Assembly: GCF_001194135.2 (NCBI RefSeq)
Contig: NC_068983.1
Coordinates: 65,089,615 to 65,123,557, forward strand
DNA from: Octopus bimaculoides
Lineage: Eukaryota
Length of the DNA: 33,943 nucleotides
Reading direction: 5' to 3'
Made by a program: the position numbers and the translations under genes. This document shows positions 2,422-22,122 of the stretch, piece after piece (position 1 is the stretch's first letter; every line of letters starts with the position of its first letter). The notes under the pieces were generated by a model. That model did not search any database. It worked only from the letters and a program-made list of their open reading frames with translations, and was not told the DNA's origin.

Positions 2422-2756
2422 NNNNNNNNNNNNNNNNNNNNNNNNNNNNNNNNNNNNNNNNNNNNNNNNNNNNNNNNNNNNNNNNNNNNNNNNNNNNNNN
2501 NNNNNNNNNNNNNNNNNNNNNNNNNNNNNNNNNNNNNNNNNNNNNNNNNNNNNNNNNNNNNNNNNNNNNNNNNNNNNNNNNNNNNNNNNNNNNNNNNNNN
2601 NNNNNNNNNNNNNNNNNNNNNNNNNNNNNNNNNNNNNNNNNNNNNNNNNNNNNNNNNNNNNNNNNNNNNNNNNNNNNNNNNNNNNNNNNNNNNNNNNNNN
2701 NNNNNNNNNNNNNNNNNNNNNNNNNNNNNNNNNNNNNNNNNNNNNNNNNNNNNNNN
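2422..2756. other. Assembly gap
   Basis: N run. Confidence 1.
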
Positions 2757-3999: not shown

Positions 4000-4641
4000 N
4001 NNNNNNNNNNNNNNNNNNNNNNNNNNNNNNNNNNNNNNNNNNNNNNNNNNNNNNNNNNNNNNNNNNNNNNNNNNNNNNNNNNNNNNNNNNNNNNNNNNNN
4101 NNNNNNNNNNNNNNNNNNNNNNNNNNNNNNNNNNNNNNNNNNNNNNNNNNNNNNNNNNNNNNNNNNNNNNNNNNNNNNNNNNNNNNNNNNNNNNNNNNNN
4201 NNNNNNNNNNNNNNNNNNNNNNNNNNNNNNNNNNNNNNNNNNNNNNNNNNNNNNNNNNNNNNNNNNNNNNNNNNNNNNNNNNNNNNNNNNNNNNNNNNNN
4301 NNNNNNNNNNNNNNNNNNNNNNNNNNNNNNNNNNNNNNNNNNNNNNNNNNNNNNNNNNNNNNNNNNNNNNNNNNNNNNNNNNNNNNNNNNNNNNNNNNNN
4401 NNNNNNNNNNNNNNNNNNNNNNNNNNNNNNNNNNNNNNNNNNNNNNNNNNNNNNNNNNNNNNNNNNNNNNNNNNNNNNNNNNNNNNNNNNNNNNNNNNNN
4501 NNNNNNNNNNNNNNNNNNNNNNNNNNNNNNNNNNNNNNNNNNNNNNNNNNNNNNNNNNNNNNNNNNNNNNNNNNNNNNNNNNNNNNNNNNNNNNNNNNNN
4601 NNNNNNNNNNNNNNNNNNNNNNNNNNNNNNNNNNNNNNNNN
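4000..4641. other. Assembly gap
   Basis: N run. Confidence 1.
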
Positions 4642-4869: not shown

Positions 4870-4902
<33 letters not shown>

Positions 4903-4916
4903 TTATATATATATAT

Positions 4917-5665
4917 AGGTTTCGGCCAGGATAGACCCATGCTATGTGAAACTTAATAGCACCATCTGGTGAAGTCTTTGACTCATATAGTGGGGACCAT
5001 GGCCCACACCTGCAAAGATATGTTATTGTTGGAAAAAATATCCGGGTGAAGGACGTTCCACCGGGATTTTTTGAAGAAATTTCTCCAGTAAACGTTTCAA
5101 TTTTATGGAATCCGCTTTCGTTTTGACCTATTTTGGTACGATTCTAAAGAGAGATTGACCGGTTTGAGGTAAAGTATTTGTGTCGTAATGTTGTGTGTCC
5201 TGAGTTCGGTTTTTGTAATGGGTGGATAGCACGTGGGGTGGGGAGTCTTGGGTGTATTTTAAAATTGATGCCAACATCATTTCTGCAATATTGATGGAAT
5301 ATTGTCCGCATCACAAAAATCATGTAGCGCTCCTGGCGGCGTTGGAGAGAGTGGAGACTGAGGTTTTTCTTTAGTCAACTACAATAGTCAATTCCTGTTA
5401 TATTATCTTTCTTGTTATTGACCTCTGGAGTACTTCCACTTTCATAATGTGTTACTTTGTGTGGAGAGACCACAGTGGGAAACAGTAGAACAGAGAAGGA
5501 TGATGGTGTGTGCATCTCTAGACCGAAAAGTTTTCAAAATCCAGGAGCACATCTTGCGGGCCAAGTGAATCTTTAGACGCATATTGTTCTTTTCCGACCA
5601 TTGAACAACAGCAGACAGATCCGACTGATTGCATGTTCGGTCTTCCATATCGTTCAAGGCCATGA
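4917..5665 (-). mobile_element. CR1/L2-type LINE 3' fragment, decayed
   Basis: Translations QSDLSAVVQWSEKNNM, ARKMCSWILKTFRSRD, KVEVLQRSITRKI and LHSLQRRQERY match the CR1 RT C-terminus; ends GGCCGAAACC beside (TA)n. Confidence 0.8.
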
Positions 5666-6503
5666 AACATTATGCATGTTCAGTAGATAAAACTCATAAG
5701 GCAAGATACAGACGAGGTCTCCGATCTCTTTCATAAATCTGTTGGGTGATGAGCAAGATATCTCCGAATCATTAACCAACACAATGTTACTGTTTTTGAG
5801 CTCATCTGAACATGGTACCAAGAAGAAATGACGACAATCCCAGAAAAAACTTATCCAAAAATGCGATTCCGATCTAAAGCAAGCAGGATTTCCTTTCTTT
5901 TTTTCATTTCTTTTATTTTTTGCGAGAGAAAGAAAGCTGGAAACGAAAGCCAGCAGCGTAACGCAAGGAGGAAATGAATGGATTGTCGGGTACTATAAGC
6001 TGTTGAACAAAAAGGGAGAAATGACAGAGTACTAGGTACTACATGGATGTGCATATTCCTGTGTACAGACATACATGCATATATACATATACATATATAT
6101 ATATAGGACGGAGAAATTGATCGTGAAATGCGCGCATTAGAAGGGGAAAACGAGACAAGTAAATATTTATATTAATAATTACTAGTAAAGTAGATAGATG
6201 CGTACGCAATTGTTTTATTTGCCACTCGTATAATATACTACAACACTTAATAAGTTATTAAATACCTCTATACAAAGACGATAGCAGAGAATCAACCAGA
6301 ACTGAATGATCTCCATATTATCACTTAGGGCTACATGGAAGGGTTCCAGAAACATAGGATCAGCAATTGCTGTATTAACAGTCACTGCCAAAAGCTTTCT
6401 TTCCATTAATACATAACTATCTAATGTAATCGGATGTTGTATTAACGTTGTCAATAATTATTACAGTAACAAGTAAGCGAGAACATATATTCCTTTATTT
6501 CAG

Positions 6504-7164: not shown

Positions 7165-7220
<56 letters not shown>
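7120..7220. repeat. (CA)n microsatellite
   Basis: Direct reading. Confidence 0.95.
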
Positions 7221-7222
<2 letters not shown>

Positions 7223-7231
7223 ACTTAGATT

Positions 7232-8040
7232 GGTTTCGGCCAGTATCGATCCAGGCCGTGACTAAGTCAAGAGCACCATCTGGATTAATCATTTAGTTAA
7301 TTATTTCGGGAAACCATGGACCACTCAAGCAGAGAATTATTGTTCGTTGAGATGTATCCAGGTCTAGGTGGTTTATCAGATATATTCTGGAGGAATTTTT
7401 CCCGGTACCGTTTGAAAGTTGTGGGGGTCTTTTCCTACTTTAATTTCTATCGGGATAACATTGAAAAGAGCAAGACCATTTGCGGTGAAGTAATTGTGGC
7501 GCAATGTTCTTGTGTGATGTGATTTCGACCATTGGAGCCTAGTCTTGGGTTAATTGTAAACATAATACCGATATCATTTCGAAAATATTGGTGGAATATT
7601 TTCCACATACTTCAAATAATGTAACGCTCACGGCGGCGTTGCAGGGAATAGAGTTTCGGCTAAGTCGAACCCAATAATCAAGTCCCACCATGCCATTTAT
7701 TTTTTTAGGGATTGATTTTTCTGGCGCTTCGTTCATCATTATGTCTTCTTTCTTGTAGGGGGGAACACAATGGGTAGTAGTATTCAAGGAGGGGGGTAGC
7801 GAATGTGGAGAAATGAACGATAATGGTTTTATGATCCCTAGATTGGAAAGTGCAGAGGATCCATGAGCACATTCTGCGGGCAACATCGACTTTTTTTGTT
7901 GATGTACACACTCCAGCTAAGGTTGCTGTGGGGTACTCCGCGTAAGTCCGATTGAAGCATCTTTCGAGCATATGCTCCCTTAATGACTTTCTGGTGCTTA
8001 GAGTTATCTGCAAATATTTTGATGGGGCTATGTTCAATGG
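7232..8040 (-). mobile_element. CR1/L2-type LINE 3' fragment, second diverged copy
   Basis: IKIFADNSK (YADD-box region), LQSDL, VARRMCSWILCTFQSRD, PLLEYY, LDYWVRL, LQRRRERY; 3' end similar to the 4917 copy (AGCACCATCTGG and GGTTTCGGCCAG shared on + strand). Confidence 0.85.
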
Positions 8041-8259
8041 ATATATCGATATACGTGTATATATATAATATTAGGGATAAAAATCCAAATTTACAGGTAA
8101 AGACTCAATTAAATTCAATTTATTAAAAATGAAAATTAAATTAAGTCTCACAGTATAAAAGATATGTGTACATGTGACTGGATTTTCAACGATGAGTTTA
8201 TGAACCATGGTTCCTTTCCCTAAAATTATATATATATATATATATATATACATATATAA

Positions 8260-9180
8260 AAAATATGAGTATATACATATATATGTACATGTATGTACAT
8301 ACCTTCATCTACATGTACATATAGATACATAACTGGGTACATGACGTGGCAAAAGAACATAGACAAAATGATAAACAAGGTACAACAAACAAGCAGGCCA
8401 CATAGAAACATCTCCTTCATCAGCTGCCACCATTAAAACCCCGGCGTTTCGAAGAATTAAGGCAGTACGCATCGTTAAAATGGTTCCTCCCACGAACACA
8501 AATTAAATTATTTTCGTGGAGGGTAGTGGCGGACGGAAAACAAGACAGGAAAATGAAACCGTGAAATAAACAAACAAAAAGGCTGTACAGCCAGACGTGA
8601 AGTGTGTATGTATTGAACGCTGTGAAGCACGAACAGGAGGGGTAAAGAAGTATGTGCGAGCTTGGGGAGTCCAAGAACGAAGAGAAATAGCAGCCGAACA
8701 CACGTGACCAGTGCAGTGTAGAGAGAAACAGTAGCAGAGGGAGAAAAAGGGGAGGAAGTAGAATAAAAATGAGCAACGAGAGGTAGAGAGGGAGAGAGAT
8801 AGTAGTAGTAACGGTGAGAGGCGAAGGACGAGCAACAAGAGATAGAGAGAGAGAGATAGTAGTGACAGGGAGATGAGAAGAACAGTATAGAGAAGAATGA
8901 GATGGAGAGATAGATATAGAGATAGAGAGAGTCGCGTTAGAAAAATAGTTAAAACTTACTGTATAGAGGTTAACGCGTGCGTTCTGGCGTGATACAAACA
9001 ATATATGAGTATAGGCATATATATGTACATGTATGTACATACCTTCATCTACATGTACATATAGATACATAACTGGGTATACATAATGATGAGTAGATAT
9101 GGATAAATTATTCAGGCGCGTACCCTAAAATATCTCAGGTATAGTCCGAATAATCGCATCCGGATTTACCCAGTGAAGTG
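8260..9180 (-). mobile_element. Non-coding hammerhead-bearing element (Penelope-like-derived or retrozyme-like) with 77-bp direct repeats
   Basis: 8263-8339 and 9003-9079 are 75/77 identical; GA-rich interior; (TA)n on both sides; carries a hammerhead core; no transposase or RT ORF. Confidence 0.6.
8411..8470 (-). ncRNA. Hammerhead ribozyme candidate, non-circularly permuted; predicted GUA cleavage between 8466 and 8465
   Basis: GCGUA-CUGCC-UUAA-U-UCUUC-GAAACGC-linker-GGCAG-CUGAUGA-A-GGAGA: intact CUGAUGA and GAAA, helices I (5 bp), II (5 bp) and III (4 bp) paired by hand. Confidence 0.65.
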
Positions 9181-12779: not shown

Positions 12780-13801
12780 GCGGACACCACCGGGTGAGAA
12801 GTGGACTGGTCTATTACTAATAAATAGTGGACTGACACAGTCAATAATGTCAATCGGCGAAGGTACGCCGTTCGGACCAGTCCTGCAGAGACGACGAAAT
12901 ACGTCGTCATAATGGGACATATCAGTGGCGACGAAGATTCGTGGCTCCCTCACTGAAAAAAGATTATGAAGAAAAAAATCGTAGTGAAAAATATTAGAAA
13001 TTCCAACGTAGTATTTGAACTATCGCAAAACTACACACAGTGAAAAATGTATAAATTCTATAGAAAAATATTTGGAGAAAAACGTTTGATAAATCTGGAA
13101 CTCTAACACAGAACTGAACTACATACAGTGAAAAATAATATAGGTCCATTTGAAGGATTTTAGTCAAGTCGCTATATGTAGTAGCACTACCAGTAATAAT
13201 GTGAGACTTTGTACTACATGCGGCATTTTGAAAAAAGCTACAAAGCACTATGGTTATCTGTGGAATAAAAACATAATGATAATGGATCCGTGCGAAGGAT
13301 TTAATAATTCTGTGTGGAACAAAAGATATTTCTGGTTTGGAAAAAAATGATAAAGAATTAACGTTACATTCACAGCGAGTCATACCAGAAGATTTCAAAC
13401 GTATGTAGATATCTGTTGAAGTTGAAAACGAACAAGTTGTTAAGAAAGTTAAAGTTGACAAAGTAAATGCAAGCAATTTTGTGATTGAAAATACTGAACA
13501 AGTCCTCCTTGAGAAGACTCCAGATGAAATGTTGATGAAAGTAACGAGTGAGGAACACGTTATAGAAAATTCTGAAATTATAACCATCTTTTACAAGAAA
13601 TGGTCCGTCTACTGAAAATGTTTCGTTGAGGAATCGTTCTAATGCAAACACTTAGGAGACAATGAAAGTTTACAGGTAAACCGGTCCAGTTTCTCCCGAC
13701 ATAAGGGTAACGAAAGAACAAGTAGAAATGAAAAATACGTTTATGTATAATAATCGTGTGCCATTTTTGACAAAAAAAAAATATAATTCTGTGTGGAACA
13801 A

Positions 13802-13838
<37 letters not shown>

Positions 13839-13956
13839 GTCCACTGCTAATAAATAATGGACTGACACAGTCAGTAATATCAATCGGTGAAGGTACGCCG
13901 TTCGGAACAGTTCCGCAGGGACGACGAAATACGTCGTCATAATGGGACATATCAGT
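12780..13956 (+). mobile_element. Rearranged RTE-like LINE 3' fragments with duplicated 3' end
   Basis: LYVVALPVIM* and IRAKDFNNSVWNKRYFWFG resemble the RTE C-terminus; ~110-bp direct repeat 12817-12926 / 13847-13956. Confidence 0.5.
13323..13781 (+). pseudogene. Possible retroposed coding fragment (E/K/V-rich) ending in A10
   Basis: About 95 codons with one internal stop; A10 at 13772-13781; 19-bp direct repeat at 13304-13322 and 13783-13801. Confidence 0.35.
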
Positions 13957-17789: not shown

Positions 17790-18153
17790 NNNNNNNNNNN
17801 NNNNNNNNNNNNNNNNNNNNNNNNNNNNNNNNNNNNNNNNNNNNNNNNNNNNNNNNNNNNNNNNNNNNNNNNNNNNNNNNNNNNNNNNNNNNNNNNNNNN
17901 NNNNNNNNNNNNNNNNNNNNNNNNNNNNNNNNNNNNNNNNNNNNNNNNNNNNNNNNNNNNNNNNNNNNNNNNNNNNNNNNNNNNNNNNNNNNNNNNNNNN
18001 NNNNNNNNNNNNNNNNNNNNNNNNNNNNNNNNNNNNNNNNNNNNNNNNNNNNNNNNNNNNNNNNNNNNNNNNNNNNNNNNNNNNNNNNNNNNNNNNNNNN
18101 NNNNNNNNNNNNNNNNNNNNNNNNNNNNNNNNNNNNNNNNNNNNNNNNNNNNN
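17790..18153. other. Assembly gap
   Basis: N run. Confidence 1.
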
Positions 18154-19809: not shown

Positions 19810-20330
19810 TATCAGAGATTTTGCTGGAACTCCTAGAGAATTGCATGCTTACCGGGCATGTTACTTGAAGCCTACGGTACCATGCTATCCGCTCTTTTCA
19901 GCTATCTAATACTTCCCACATTATTCTGGCAGTGCCATAGAGGCAAACATCTTGTAAGAGTTCTACTGGGTACTCTATTAAGTTTCCATTATGTTCCTCT
20001 TGACGCCTTCTGATACTATTCCCAAGGACCTAACAATAACTGGCACTATCTTCACCTCTTCATTTTCAATAGCCGGGCTATTTCGTACTTAAGAAGGTTG
20101 GATTTATCTATTGTTTCGCCTTCAACCATGACTATTCCTAGGTAAAAGGGGCACGCATTATCAGCTATCAAGCACATATAGAACATCTTCTCGAGCACCA
20201 CTAGGCCAGGTCTGTTATGCTCTAGCACCTGATTTGTTAGGATTGGGAAATCCCAGAAGATTTTGCTAGTCTCCGACTCCGACACTCTCTGCGATTTCAA
20301 TTCTTTCTGCCGACATTTCTTGGTGCCGAC
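19810..20330 (-). mobile_element. R4/Dong-like RLE endonuclease 3' fragment
   Basis: KIFWDFPILTNQVLEHNRPGLVV..CLIADNACP..KYEIARL; (AAC)n tail at about 19780-19800. Confidence 0.8.
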
Positions 20331-20339
20331 TTTTGAAAT

Positions 20340-20990
20340 ACATCTAGATTATAAGGTATTTCTAAAGTTTTCAGATGTCTTTTTTCATATTGGGTGGCAT
20401 TTAACCCAATGCTCCGACAACAATATGGATAAACTTAATGTTTAACTCTCGTAGCTGCCACATGTCAGCGATCACAATTTTCAGGTCTCCATATTCATCA
20501 ATCTTTTCTCTTCCTTTCATGATATGTTGACCTTCTGGCACTGCCACGTCAACTATTAAGCACAGTTGTTTGTCCCTCCTAAAGGTTACTATATCCGTCT
20601 TTCGGTGCTCTAACACTTTGTCTGTCTGGAAATCAAAAGTCCCAGAGGATTTTTGCCTTCCCCTTTTCGTCCATAACATTTTCTGGTGTGTGTCGGTACC
20701 AATACCCGTAACATCATATCAATACTTACGGCATAGTGGCCAGTGGAGCTTTTAGGCTACTTTTCTAGTGTCTACGCTTGCAATCTTACTGCACAAGTCT
20801 TCCACAAGCTCTAACAATGTGAGTCACGCTTTCGACCTTCTTCCTAAACATTCTGCAGAGATCTGTTGCATTTCTGTGGTATATATTCCTTTTCACTGAG
20901 TTGGTAAACGTTTTCTATATGCTGTCAGTTCCGTCAAAATCATCCCCATTGCGACTTCATAGAAGCAGCCATACCTGAACTCAAATTATA
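20340..20990 (-). mobile_element. R4/Dong-like RLE endonuclease fragment
   Basis: FDFQTDKVLEHRKTDIV..CLIVDVAVP..EKIDEYGDLK..IVVGALG (PD-(D/E)xK domain). Confidence 0.85.
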
Positions 20991-21291: not shown

Positions 21292-22122
21292 NNNNNNNNN
21301 NNNNNNNNNNNNNNNNNNNNNNNNNNNNNNNNNNNNNNNNNNNNNNNNNNNNNNNNNNNNNNNNNNNNNNNNNNNNNNNNNNNNNNNNNNNNNNNNNNNN
21401 NNNNNNNNNNNNNNNNNNNNNNNNNNNNNNNNNNNNNNNNNNNNNNNNNNNNNNNNNNNNNNNNNNNNNNNNNNNNNNNNNNNNNNNNNNNNNNNNNNNN
21501 NNNNNNNNNNNNNNNNNNNNNNNNNNNNNNNNNNNNNNNNNNNNNNNNNNNNNNNNNNNNNNNNNNNNNNNNNNNNNNNNNNNNNNNNNNNNNNNNNNNN
21601 NNNNNNNNNNNNNNNNNNNNNNNNNNNNNNNNNNNNNNNNNNNNNNNNNNNNNNNNNNNNNNNNNNNNNNNNNNNNNNNNNNNNNNNNNNNNNNNNNNNN
21701 NNNNNNNNNNNNNNNNNNNNNNNNNNNNNNNNNNNNNNNNNNNNNNNNNNNNNNNNNNNNNNNNNNNNNNNNNNNNNNNNNNNNNNNNNNNNNNNNNNNN
21801 NNNNNNNNNNNNNNNNNNNNNNNNNNNNNNNNNNNNNNNNNNNNNNNNNNNNNNNNNNNNNNNNNNNNNNNNNNNNNNNNNNNNNNNNNNNNNNNNNNNN
21901 NNNNNNNNNNNNNNNNNNNNNNNNNNNNNNNNNNNNNNNNNNNNNNNNNNNNNNNNNNNNNNNNNNNNNNNNNNNNNNNNNNNNNNNNNNNNNNNNNNNN
22001 NNNNNNNNNNNNNNNNNNNNNNNNNNNNNNNNNNNNNNNNNNNNNNNNNNNNNNNNNNNNNNNNNNNNNNNNNNNNNNNNNNNNNNNNNNNNNNNNNNNN
22101 NNNNNNNNNNNNNNNNNNNNNN
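21292..22122. other. Assembly gap
   Basis: N run. Confidence 1.

What the first reader, a model, noticed from the sequence alone, without database searches (positions are those of the whole stretch)
8411..8470. Complete hammerhead ribozyme with its three strands in non-circularly permuted order
Seen: the minus strand reads 5'-GCGU A|CUGCC UUAA U UCUUC GAAACGC cgggguuuuaauggu GGCAG CUGAUGA A GGAGA-3'. All core nucleotides are present (C3-A9 CUGAUGA, G10.1-C11.1, G12A13A14, A15.1-U16.1, H17=A in a GUA triplet). Helix III is GCGU/ACGC (4 bp). Helix I is CUGCC/GGCAG (5 bp), extendable by UUAA/UUAA across a UGGU bulge. Helix II is GGAGA/UCUUC (5 bp, one G-U), with one extra A after A9. Known: types I, II and III are circular permutations of the order CUGA strand, GAAA strand, cleavage strand. 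Here the order is reversed (cleavage, GAAA, CUGA), which no circular permutation produces, so the fold must be pseudoknotted. Extra nucleotides after A9 occur in natural hammerheads. From memory, natural non-circularly permuted hammerheads were reported by Eckert, Weinberg and colleagues (NAR 2023); I cannot check whether this family was among them. Inference: the very short linker from helix I to helix II is plausible because these helices lie side by side in the active fold. A competing pairing (UUCUUC with GAAGGA) would sequester G8/A9 and could act as an off state.
Basis: partly seen in the sequence, partly recalled or inferred. Interest (0 to 1): 0.9.

Follow-up and report, generated by a model that had tools for sequence, protein, structure and literature searches.

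The report
Lone permuted hammerhead motif, unproven
The sequence really does spell out every part of a self-cutting hammerhead RNA in the rare, already published "S-G-C" scrambled order, but it is a single copy with no relatives found, so it is more likely a lucky coincidence in junk DNA than a working ribozyme.

Summary
The minus strand 8470-8411 holds all hammerhead core nucleotides and three helices of 5, 5 and 4 bp, in the order cleavage strand, GAAA strand, CUGAUGA strand. This is the "type-SGC" non-circular permutation published by Eckert et al. (NAR 2023), so the topology is not new. The candidate lines up block by block with the published ribozymes. Its extra nucleotide after A9 falls where all 20 published sequences I aligned carry an extra U. 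By chance such a motif is rare in one window: about 5e-4 for any block order and about 1e-5 for this exact architecture. Over a whole genome it is still expected roughly 18 and 0.2 times per Gb.

Evidence for a selected ribozyme is missing. I found no second copy in the window and no relative in any searchable collection, so covariation cannot be tested. A covariance model built from published SGC sequences does not detect it. The fourth helix, required for cleavage in the one published SGC ribozyme where it was mutated, is only marginal here (p 0.07-0.3). The site lies in AT-rich, repeat-rich, apparently eukaryotic non-coding DNA.

Best reading: a fortuitous singleton (about 0.6). A genuine genome-encoded type-SGC hammerhead remains possible (about 0.25) and is cheap to test.

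The parts
8467..8470 (-). Helix III 3' strand, GCGU (positions 16.4-16.1)
   Evidence: sequence. It pairs with ACGC at 8447-8444 (4 bp, -3.4 kcal/mol).
8466..8466 (-). H17 = A of a GUA triplet. The predicted scissile bond lies between 8466 and 8465.
   Evidence: GUA is a natural triplet. Cleavage is not tested.
8461..8465 (-). Helix I 5' strand, CUGCC (1.1-1.5)
   Evidence: Pairs with GGCAG at 8428-8424 (5 bp, -6.8 kcal/mol).
8456..8460 (-). Helix I to helix II linker, UUAAU (5 nt)
   Evidence: Published SGC ribozymes have about 1-4 nt here.
8451..8455 (-). Helix II 3' strand, UCUUC (11.5-11.1)
   Evidence: Pairs with GGAGA at 8415-8411 (5 bp including one G-U, -2.7 kcal/mol).
8444..8450 (-). 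G12 A13 A14 followed by the helix III 5' strand ACGC (15.1-15.4)
   Evidence: found by the descriptor.
8429..8443 (-). 15-nt linker, CGGGGUUUUAAUGGU. It holds the only candidate 5' strand of a fourth helix (GGGUU at 8441-8437 and AUGG at 8433-8430).
   Evidence: the best duplex with the 3' flank is -6.9 kcal/mol, p 0.07-0.31 against shuffles, which is not significant.
8424..8428 (-). Helix I 3' strand, GGCAG (2.5-2.1)
8417..8423 (-). Core C3-A9, CUGAUGA
   Evidence: It is one of 14 CUGANGA sites in the window.
8416..8416 (-). Extra A between A9 and G10.1
   Evidence: it aligns to the extra U present in all 20 published SGC sequences aligned. An A at this position is tolerated in CChMVd.
8411..8415 (-). 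Helix II 5' strand, GGAGA (10.1-10.5)
8395..8405 (-). Possible 3' strand of a fourth helix (CUAU at 8405-8402 and GGCCU at 8399-8395). Doubtful.

Best explanation
The site is a real, complete match to the hammerhead consensus in the published type-SGC block order. Most likely it is a solitary, unselected occurrence in non-coding, repeat-rich, apparently eukaryotic DNA rather than an evolved ribozyme.

If the minus strand is transcribed, the RNA could in principle adopt the doubly pseudoknotted hammerhead fold:
- helix III GCGU/ACGC,
- helix I CUGCC/GGCAG,
- helix II UCUUC/GGAGA,
- an A inserted after A9.

It would then cut itself after A8466 by the usual attack of the 2'-OH on the phosphate. 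I estimate a 35-50% chance of some Mg2+-dependent cleavage in vitro. A sequence that satisfies the consensus can cleave without being biological, as the published singleton GCS-1 did.

Shown here: the sequence, the pairings, collinearity with the published type, and rarity in one window.
Inferred: lack of selection, the fold, and any activity.
For: - Single copy: there is no other copy of 8340-9015 or of the motif in the window.
- No relatives elsewhere. Metagenome, viral and prokaryote-genome pattern scans gave only chance hits with no hammerhead motif around them.
- Protein-level searches with the overlapping ORF and with neighbouring transposon fragments found nothing. Exact look-ups of window ORFs found nothing either.
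- Rfam gives no hit. Covariance model R1, built from 20 published SGC sequences, does not report the site at E<=10 with filters off.
- The fourth helix was needed for cleavage in SGC-3 and is used 'predominantly or exclusively' by published SGC ribozymes. Here it is only a -6.9 kcal/mol bipartite G-U-rich pairing with p 0.07-0.31.
- Nested folding of the region is no better than shuffles, z +0.26 to +0.70.
- Chance rates predict about 18 hits per Gb for any order and about 3 per Gb for SGC.
- The authors of the family treat uncorroborated descriptor hits as expected false positives and found no eukaryotic SGC when they searched all of RefSeq.
- Context: AT-rich draft assembly with N gaps, microsatellites and decayed LINE-like fragments.
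Against: - For this one window the coincidence is strong: 5e-4 for any order and about 1e-5 for SGC with a short helix I to helix II linker.
- Its helix energies (sum -12.9 kcal/mol against a nested MFE of -14.7) fall inside the range of validated SGC ribozymes (-9.5 to -17.6 against -10.6 to -21.5).
- No searchable collection here contains eukaryotic genomic DNA, so the absence of relatives is weak evidence.
Confidence: 0.6

Rival explanations
1. It is a genuine, selected type-SGC hammerhead ribozyme encoded in a eukaryotic genome. It would be unrelated in sequence to the published HRIMA-1 and SGC-variant families. It would cleave its transcript in cis between A8466 and C8465, with the short UUAAU linker (plus perhaps a weak fourth helix) holding helices I and II side by side.
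For: - The core and all three helices are complete.
- It is collinear with published SGC ribozymes block by block, including the inserted nucleotide after A9.
- Both deviations from the canonical form, A10 and GUA, are in the tolerated set.
- Chance expectation for this exact architecture is about 7e-6 per window.
- Helix energies lie within the range of validated examples.
- A fourth helix of 4+5 bp can be drawn.
Against: - No homologue was found and no covariation can be shown.
- The family covariance model does not detect it.
- The fourth helix is not significant, while disrupting that helix abolished cleavage in SGC-3.
- Helix II is weak at -2.7 kcal/mol.
- All published SGC ribozymes come from metatranscriptome or metagenome contigs of presumed circular RNA agents, and none from the RefSeq genomes the authors searched.
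Confidence: 0.25
2. It is the ribozyme, or a decayed relic of one, of a mobile element. The roughly 660-bp segment 9005-8343 is flanked by 77-nt direct repeats. It would be a non-autonomous retroelement or retrozyme-like unit whose RNA is processed by the hammerhead.
For: - 77-nt direct repeats at 9082-9006 and 8342-8266, with 2 mismatches, bracket the segment that holds the motif.
- Hammerheads in animal genomes are typically carried by retrozymes and Penelope-like elements.
- Decayed LINE-like fragments lie immediately downstream.
Against: - Only one ribozyme site is present, and it lies outside the repeats, so a monomer could not be excised.
- The repeats are microsatellite-like (TGTA/CATA) sequence, which is prone to slippage or assembly error.
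- There is no second copy of the segment in the window.
- There is no tandem array and no poly(A) or LINE-type tail.
- Animal retrozyme and Penelope-like-element hammerheads are type I, not SGC.
Confidence: 0.08
3. The region is protein-coding (ORF 9070-8420, 216 aa, minus strand) and the RNA motif is incidental.
For: An open frame of 216-234 codons covers the motif and ends in the UGA of CUGAUGA.
Against: - The translation is low-complexity Ser/Leu/Pro/Thr from a CT-rich strand.
- It has no homologue in 5.8 billion protein clusters.
- It has no Pfam family above threshold.
- No gene with this product is on record.
Confidence: 0.02

Closest known systems
Type-SGC hammerhead ribozymes, HRIMA-1 motif (Eckert, Friedrich, Weinberg & Weinberg, NAR 2023; PMC10085705)
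   Same: - Same block order S-G-C and the same doubly pseudoknotted topology.
- Helices I and II are 5 bp each.
- Helix I is joined directly to helix II by a few nucleotides.
- One extra nucleotide sits between A9 and G10.1.
- All core nucleotides are present.
   Different: - HRIMA-1 has an invariant helix I (AUGUU/AACAU), mostly a GUC triplet, and an extra U rather than A.
- It has a 5-6 bp helix III and a clear Watson-Crick fourth helix.
- It has copious covariation and comes from metatranscriptomes.
- The candidate shares none of the non-core sequence and is missed by a covariance model of the family.
- The candidate has only a marginal fourth helix and lies in genomic DNA.
Type-SGC variant ribozymes, e.g. 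SGC-3 (same paper)
   Same: - They show that helix I sequence is free in this topology.
- Same architecture and the same extra nucleotide after A9.
- SGC-3, reconstructed from the published oligos, reads ...GCAAUC^UGUGAU-UA-GUGUC-GAAA-UUGC-UUACGUG-AUCAUA-CUGAUGA-U-GACAC-AA-CACGUAA.
   Different: - SGC-3 has a 7-bp fourth helix whose disruption abolished cleavage and whose restoration rescued it.
- There are 176 variant sequences with covariation.
- The candidate is a singleton.
Type-GCS singleton GCS-1 from Caballeronia peredens (same paper)
   Same: It is a lone descriptor hit in genomic DNA with all expected features and no covariation. This is the closest precedent for the evidential status of this candidate.
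   Different: - It has a different block order and is bacterial.
- It was tested and cleaved incompletely in vitro, yet the authors still rate its biological relevance as unclear.
- The candidate here is untested.
CChMVd (+) hammerhead with extra A10
   Same: It has an extra A between A9 and G10.1 and still self-cleaves. A causes a moderate rate decrease, U gives a 3-4-fold increase, and C or G is detrimental.
   Different: It is a classical type III hammerhead in a viroid and is not permuted.
Type I hammerheads of animal retrozymes and Penelope-like elements
   Same: They are hammerheads encoded in repeat-rich animal genomes next to retroelement debris.
   Different: - They are circular-permutation type I, multi-copy or tandem, and often have a very short palindromic helix III and act as dimers.
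- The candidate is SGC, single-copy, and has a 4-bp helix III.

Membership tests
Hammerhead ribozyme (catalytic core) | C3 U4 G5 A6 N7 G8 A9 between helices I and II | tested here: met
   CUGAUGA at 8423-8417 on the minus strand.
Hammerhead ribozyme (catalytic core) | G12 A13 A14 between helices II and III, the A15.1-U16.1 pair, and H17 not G | tested here: met
   GAA at 8450-8448, A8447 paired with U8467, and A8466.
Hammerhead ribozyme (catalytic core) | G10.1-C11.1 closing helix II directly after A9 | tested here: inconclusive
   This is met only if A8416 is treated as an inserted nucleotide. Without the insertion, 10.1 would be an A opposite C. The insertion is precedented.
Hammerhead ribozyme (catalytic core) | Three helices I, II and III radiating from the core | tested here: met
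   Helices of 5, 5 and 4 bp with energies of -6.8, -2.7 and -3.4 kcal/mol.
Hammerhead ribozyme (catalytic core) | Site-specific Mg2+-dependent self-cleavage 3' of H17, abolished by G5 or G12 mutation | not testable with these tools
   This needs in vitro transcription and cleavage assays.
Hammerhead ribozyme (catalytic core) | Match to the Rfam hammerhead covariance models | tested here: not met
   There was no hit at the gathering threshold or at E<=10. This is uninformative in my judgement: covariance models encode one nested, collinear arrangement, and I did not check which hammerhead models Rfam 15 holds.
Type-SGC permuted hammerhead (Eckert et al. 2023) | 5'-to-3' block order S (cleavage), G (GAAA), C (CUGANGA) | tested here: met
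   The descriptor classifies the hit as SGC, and it is collinear with published sequences.
Type-SGC permuted hammerhead (Eckert et al. 2023) | Helix I joined directly to helix II by a short linker (typically about 3 nt) | tested here: met
   The linker is 5 nt, UUAAU at 8460-8456. Published linkers are about 1-4 nt.
Type-SGC permuted hammerhead (Eckert et al. 2023) | Helix joining the other sides of stems I and II (fourth helix), needed for cleavage in SGC-3 | tested here: inconclusive
   The best pairing is GGGUU..AUGG with CUAU..GGCCU at -6.9 kcal/mol. Its p value is 0.07-0.31 against shuffles, so it is possible but not distinguishable from chance.
Type-SGC permuted hammerhead (Eckert et al. 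2023) | Covariation supporting helices I, II and III across homologues (the authors' acceptance criterion) | not testable with these tools
   No homologue was obtainable. There is no copy in the window, and the scans of searchable collections gave only chance hits. Eukaryotic genomes cannot be searched by DNA here.
Type-SGC permuted hammerhead (Eckert et al. 2023) | Sequence and structure homology to the HRIMA-1/SGC alignment (Infernal) | tested here: not met
   Model R1 (20 published sequences, helix III plus the fourth helix) gives no hit at 8411-8470 at E<=10 with filters off.
Animal retrozyme / Penelope-like-element hammerhead | Type I topology in tandem or pseudo-LTR repeats, with multiple copies | tested here: not met
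   The topology is SGC and there is one copy. The 77-nt flanking repeats do not contain the motif.

The most novel reading that the evidence does not exclude
This is the first DNA-genome-encoded, eukaryotic example of a non-circularly permuted (type-SGC) hammerhead ribozyme, arisen independently of the metatranscriptome HRIMA-1 lineage. That would show the permuted fold is not confined to circular-RNA agents, and that it can work with an A insertion and without a strong fourth helix.
Probability: 0.25. Interest if true: 0.75.

Novelty: not a real feature. Interest (0 to 1): 0.4.

Why it matters
If it proved to be a working, conserved ribozyme, it would take the only known natural non-circular RNA permutation out of metatranscriptome circular-RNA agents and into a cellular eukaryotic genome. 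It would also give an independent sequence solution for that pseudoknotted fold, with different helix I, an A instead of a U after A9, a longer helix I to helix II linker, and a weak or absent fourth helix. That would be useful for understanding how such permutations arise and for ribozyme engineering.

As it stands it mainly shows that descriptor-quality hammerhead matches, including permuted ones, occur by chance at a rate of several per gigabase. They need covariation or biochemistry before being believed.

Tried and rejected
1. Rfam 15 in gathering and E-value modes gave no ribozyme hit. It returned only AT-rich miRNA-like noise at 8244-8343.

2. Looking for copies:
- BLAST of 8340-9015 and of 7200-8420 against the window found nothing beyond the 77-nt repeat and LINE fragments.
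- The 14-nt identity TAATTCTTCGAAAC with a second hammerhead-like site at about 33.39 kb is isolated (E 0.23) and is not homology.

3. Reaching the source genome through proteins: the ORF over the motif, a LINE composite and a transposon ORF all gave no hits. Pfam gave none. Exact-product look-ups of three ORFs gave none.

4. Pattern scans:
- The metagenome scan gave one GC-rich bacterial chance hit.
- The viral scans gave 0, 3 and 5 chance hits, with no hammerhead motif found around them; the script stopped before printing every locus's context.
- The prokaryotic genome scan gave 0 hits.

5. I considered arguing that competing nested folds rule out activity. The competitors are the CUUCG/CGGGG hairpin and the shifted helix I register CUGCC/GGUGG. 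I rejected this argument because validated SGC ribozymes show the same relation between helix energies and nested MFE.

6. I considered that the local purine/pyrimidine tracts inflate the chance of helix II. I rejected this because a null trained on the local sequence gives a lower hit rate, not a higher one.

7. A conventional type I, II or III hammerhead using the same CUGAUGA is not possible, since there is no GAAA within about 100 nt downstream.

8. tRNA or SINE head: ARAGORN found none.

Full report
**What is there**

Assigned to hammerhead numbering:
- Helix III is GCGU (8470-8467) with ACGC (8447-8444), including A15.1-U16.1.
- H17 is A8466, and the scissile bond lies between 8466 and 8465.
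- Helix I is CUGCC (8465-8461) with GGCAG (8428-8424).
- Helix II is UCUUC (8455-8451) with GGAGA (8415-8411), including G10.1-C11.1 and one G-U pair.
- G12-A14 are 8450-8448 and C3-A9 are 8423-8417.
- One extra A (8416) sits between A9 and G10.1.

Duplex energies are -6.8 (I), -2.7 (II) and -3.4 (III) kcal/mol. The three helices cross each other, so the fold has to be pseudoknotted.

**Is it more than chance?**

I wrote a descriptor with these requirements:
- CUGANGA, 0 or 1 inserted nt, G10.1/C11.1, GAAA, U16.1, and H17 not G;
- helices of at least 5/5/4 bp with G-U allowed;
- a span of at most 150 nt, in any of the six block orders.

It finds this one site in the whole window on both strands. 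There are 14 CUGANGA sites in the window.

- Simulating 2.94 million random contexts around a CUGANGA under a first-order Markov model of the window gives 3.8e-5 hits per site. That is 5.4e-4 per window for any order and 9e-5 for the SGC order. An independent unconditioned simulation agrees in order of magnitude.
- A null trained on the local pyrimidine-rich sequence gives 1.65e-5 per site. For SGC with a helix I to helix II linker of at most 6 nt it gives about 5e-7 per site, or about 7e-6 per window.

For one window the motif is therefore a rare event. The same rates imply about 18 per Gb (any order), about 3 per Gb (SGC) and about 0.2 per Gb (narrow architecture) in a large genome. The descriptor was also fitted after the fact.

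**What it corresponds to**

The block order is exactly the "type SGC" non-circular permutation described by Eckert, Friedrich, Weinberg and Weinberg (PMC10085705). In that paper S is the cleavage block, G the GAAA block and C the CUGANGA block.
- The published set is 407 HRIMA-1 sequences plus 176 variants, all from metatranscriptome or metagenome contigs.
- Helix I is joined to helix II by a linker of typically about three nucleotides.
- A fourth helix ties together the other sides of stems I and II.
- Cleavage occurs at the canonical site.

The supplementary alignments show two further regularities. Helices I and II are each 5 bp, and almost every sequence has one extra U between A9 and G10.1 (CUGAUGA-U-GGCCA).

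A MAFFT alignment of 20 published sequences with the candidate is collinear block by block, and the candidate's extra A falls in the column of that U. An A at this position is tolerated in the CChMVd(+) hammerhead, where A causes a moderate decrease, U a 3-4-fold increase, and C or G is detrimental. GUA is a natural cleavage triplet. The topology is therefore already known, and the candidate matches its architecture well.

**What is missing**

- Relatives. The 8340-9015 segment and the motif occur once in the window. Pattern scans of the metagenome, viral and prokaryote-genome collections gave only chance matches with no hammerhead motif around them. The protein route to eukaryotic assemblies gave nothing for the overlapping ORF or for neighbouring transposon fragments. 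No covariation test is therefore possible. The authors of the family accept only candidates with covariation and expect descriptor false positives.
- Family homology. A covariance model built from 20 published SGC sequences (helix III plus the fourth helix) does not report the site at E<=10 with filters off. Rfam gives nothing.
- The fourth helix. In SGC-3 its disruption abolished cleavage and compensation restored it. [quoted passage not shown] Here the best pairing between the 15-nt linker and the 3' flank is GGGUU..AUGG with CUAU..GGCCU, at -6.9 kcal/mol. Shuffled controls reach that value 7-31% of the time.

**Neutral evidence**

Nested folding of the region is no better than shuffles, with z between +0.26 and +0.70. 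RNAfold prefers a competitor that combines a shifted helix I register with a CUUCG/CGGGG hairpin. Validated SGC ribozymes show the same pattern: summed helix energies of -9.5 to -17.6 against nested MFEs of -10.6 to -21.5 kcal/mol, compared with -12.9 against -14.7 for the candidate. Thermodynamics therefore do not discriminate.

**Context**

The window is AT-rich (GC 0.18-0.40), full of microsatellites, and has six N gaps. It looks like a draft eukaryotic assembly.
- The motif lies in a roughly 660-bp CT-rich segment bracketed by 77-nt direct repeats at 9082-9006 and 8342-8266, which differ at 2 positions.
- The repeats are TGTA/CATA-like low-complexity sequence, and they account for the sub-threshold miRNA-like Rfam hits.
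- A 216-codon ORF covers the motif, but it is low-complexity and has no homologues.
- Downstream lie decayed LINE-like 3' fragments, with a second copy at about 4.9-5.7 kb.
- None of this resembles a retrozyme or Penelope-like-element arrangement, which would put a type I hammerhead inside repeated units.

**Weighing**

Against chance:
- the per-window rarity;
- the detailed fit to the published SGC architecture.

Against a selected ribozyme:
- it is a singleton;
- the fourth helix is not significant;
- helix II is weak;
- there is no family homology;
- the published RefSeq-wide search found no eukaryotic SGC family;
- a large genome is expected to contain several such matches by chance.

I put a fortuitous, unselected motif at about 0.6, a genuine selected type-SGC ribozyme at about 0.25, a mobile-element ribozyme or relic at about 0.08, and coding sequence at about 0.02. 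Some in vitro cleavage is plausible under either of the first two readings, as the singleton GCS-1 cleaved in vitro. Biochemistry therefore needs to be paired with conservation or expression data.

**Verdict**

- Observation: confirmed.
- Interpretation: partly supported. The structural description and the literature recollection are correct, but function is unsupported and the novelty was overstated.
- If real, it would be a new, sequence-unrelated member of a known kind in an unexpected host. On present evidence I file it as probably not a biological feature, of moderate interest because the decisive tests are cheap.

Noticed in passing
window 33372-33455, minus strand: A second, weaker hammerhead-like match in classical type I order: UUCC-CUGAGGA-GAAG...(53 nt)...CUUC-GAAA-CAUAUGUC-GGAA. 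It has a GUC site and a palindromic helix III (ACAUAUGU), reminiscent of dimeric animal hammerheads. Helices I and II are only 4 bp. The expected count is 3.5e-3 per window. It folds no better than shuffles (z +0.88) and is not part of any repeat in the window. It is probably chance.
   Followed up: partly
window 9006-9082 and 8266-8342: A 77-nt direct repeat with 2 mismatches, made of TGTA/CATA-like sequence, brackets the roughly 660-bp CT-rich segment that holds the motif. Similarity does not extend beyond the repeat. It could be a long target-site duplication, slippage, or an assembly artefact.
   Followed up: partly
window 7226-8070 and 4912-5700, minus strand: Two decayed, frameshifted copies of what looks, from my own recognition of the translated motifs, like the 3' end of a LINE. 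They are 66-75% identical in patches. Each ends in ...CTGGCCGAAACC followed by a microsatellite. There were no Pfam or database hits. The GGCCGAAAC end was picked up as weak noise by the SGC covariance model (hit at 4895-4940).
   Followed up: partly
window 28193-28370 and 28433-28610: Two 178-nt copies, 100% identical and 240 nt apart, sit immediately after an 896-nt N gap (27297-28192). This is possibly an assembly artefact or a very recent tandem duplication.
   Followed up: no
window 31414-31817 and 32814-33240: An old inverted repeat of about 430 nt at 66% identity, with short open frames in both arms. It is probably two decayed copies of a repeat element in opposite orientation.
   Followed up: partly
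window 20055-20718, minus strand: Open frames of 105 and 98 codons. From my own recognition, the ...LIVDVAVPEGQ...KIDEYGDLK...IVVGALG pattern looks like a transposon-encoded nuclease-type domain. There was no Pfam hit and no database hit.
   Followed up: partly
window 2422-2756, 4000-4641, 17790-18153, 21292-22122, 25821-26215, 27297-28192: Six runs of N totalling 3463 nt are assembly gaps. They generate all the long 'repeats' reported by the repeat finder.
   Followed up: yes
window 12809-12926 / 13839-13956 and 24163-24323 / 26288-26448: Two further dispersed direct repeats, of 118 nt at 91% identity and 161 nt at 83% identity, of unknown nature.
   Followed up: no
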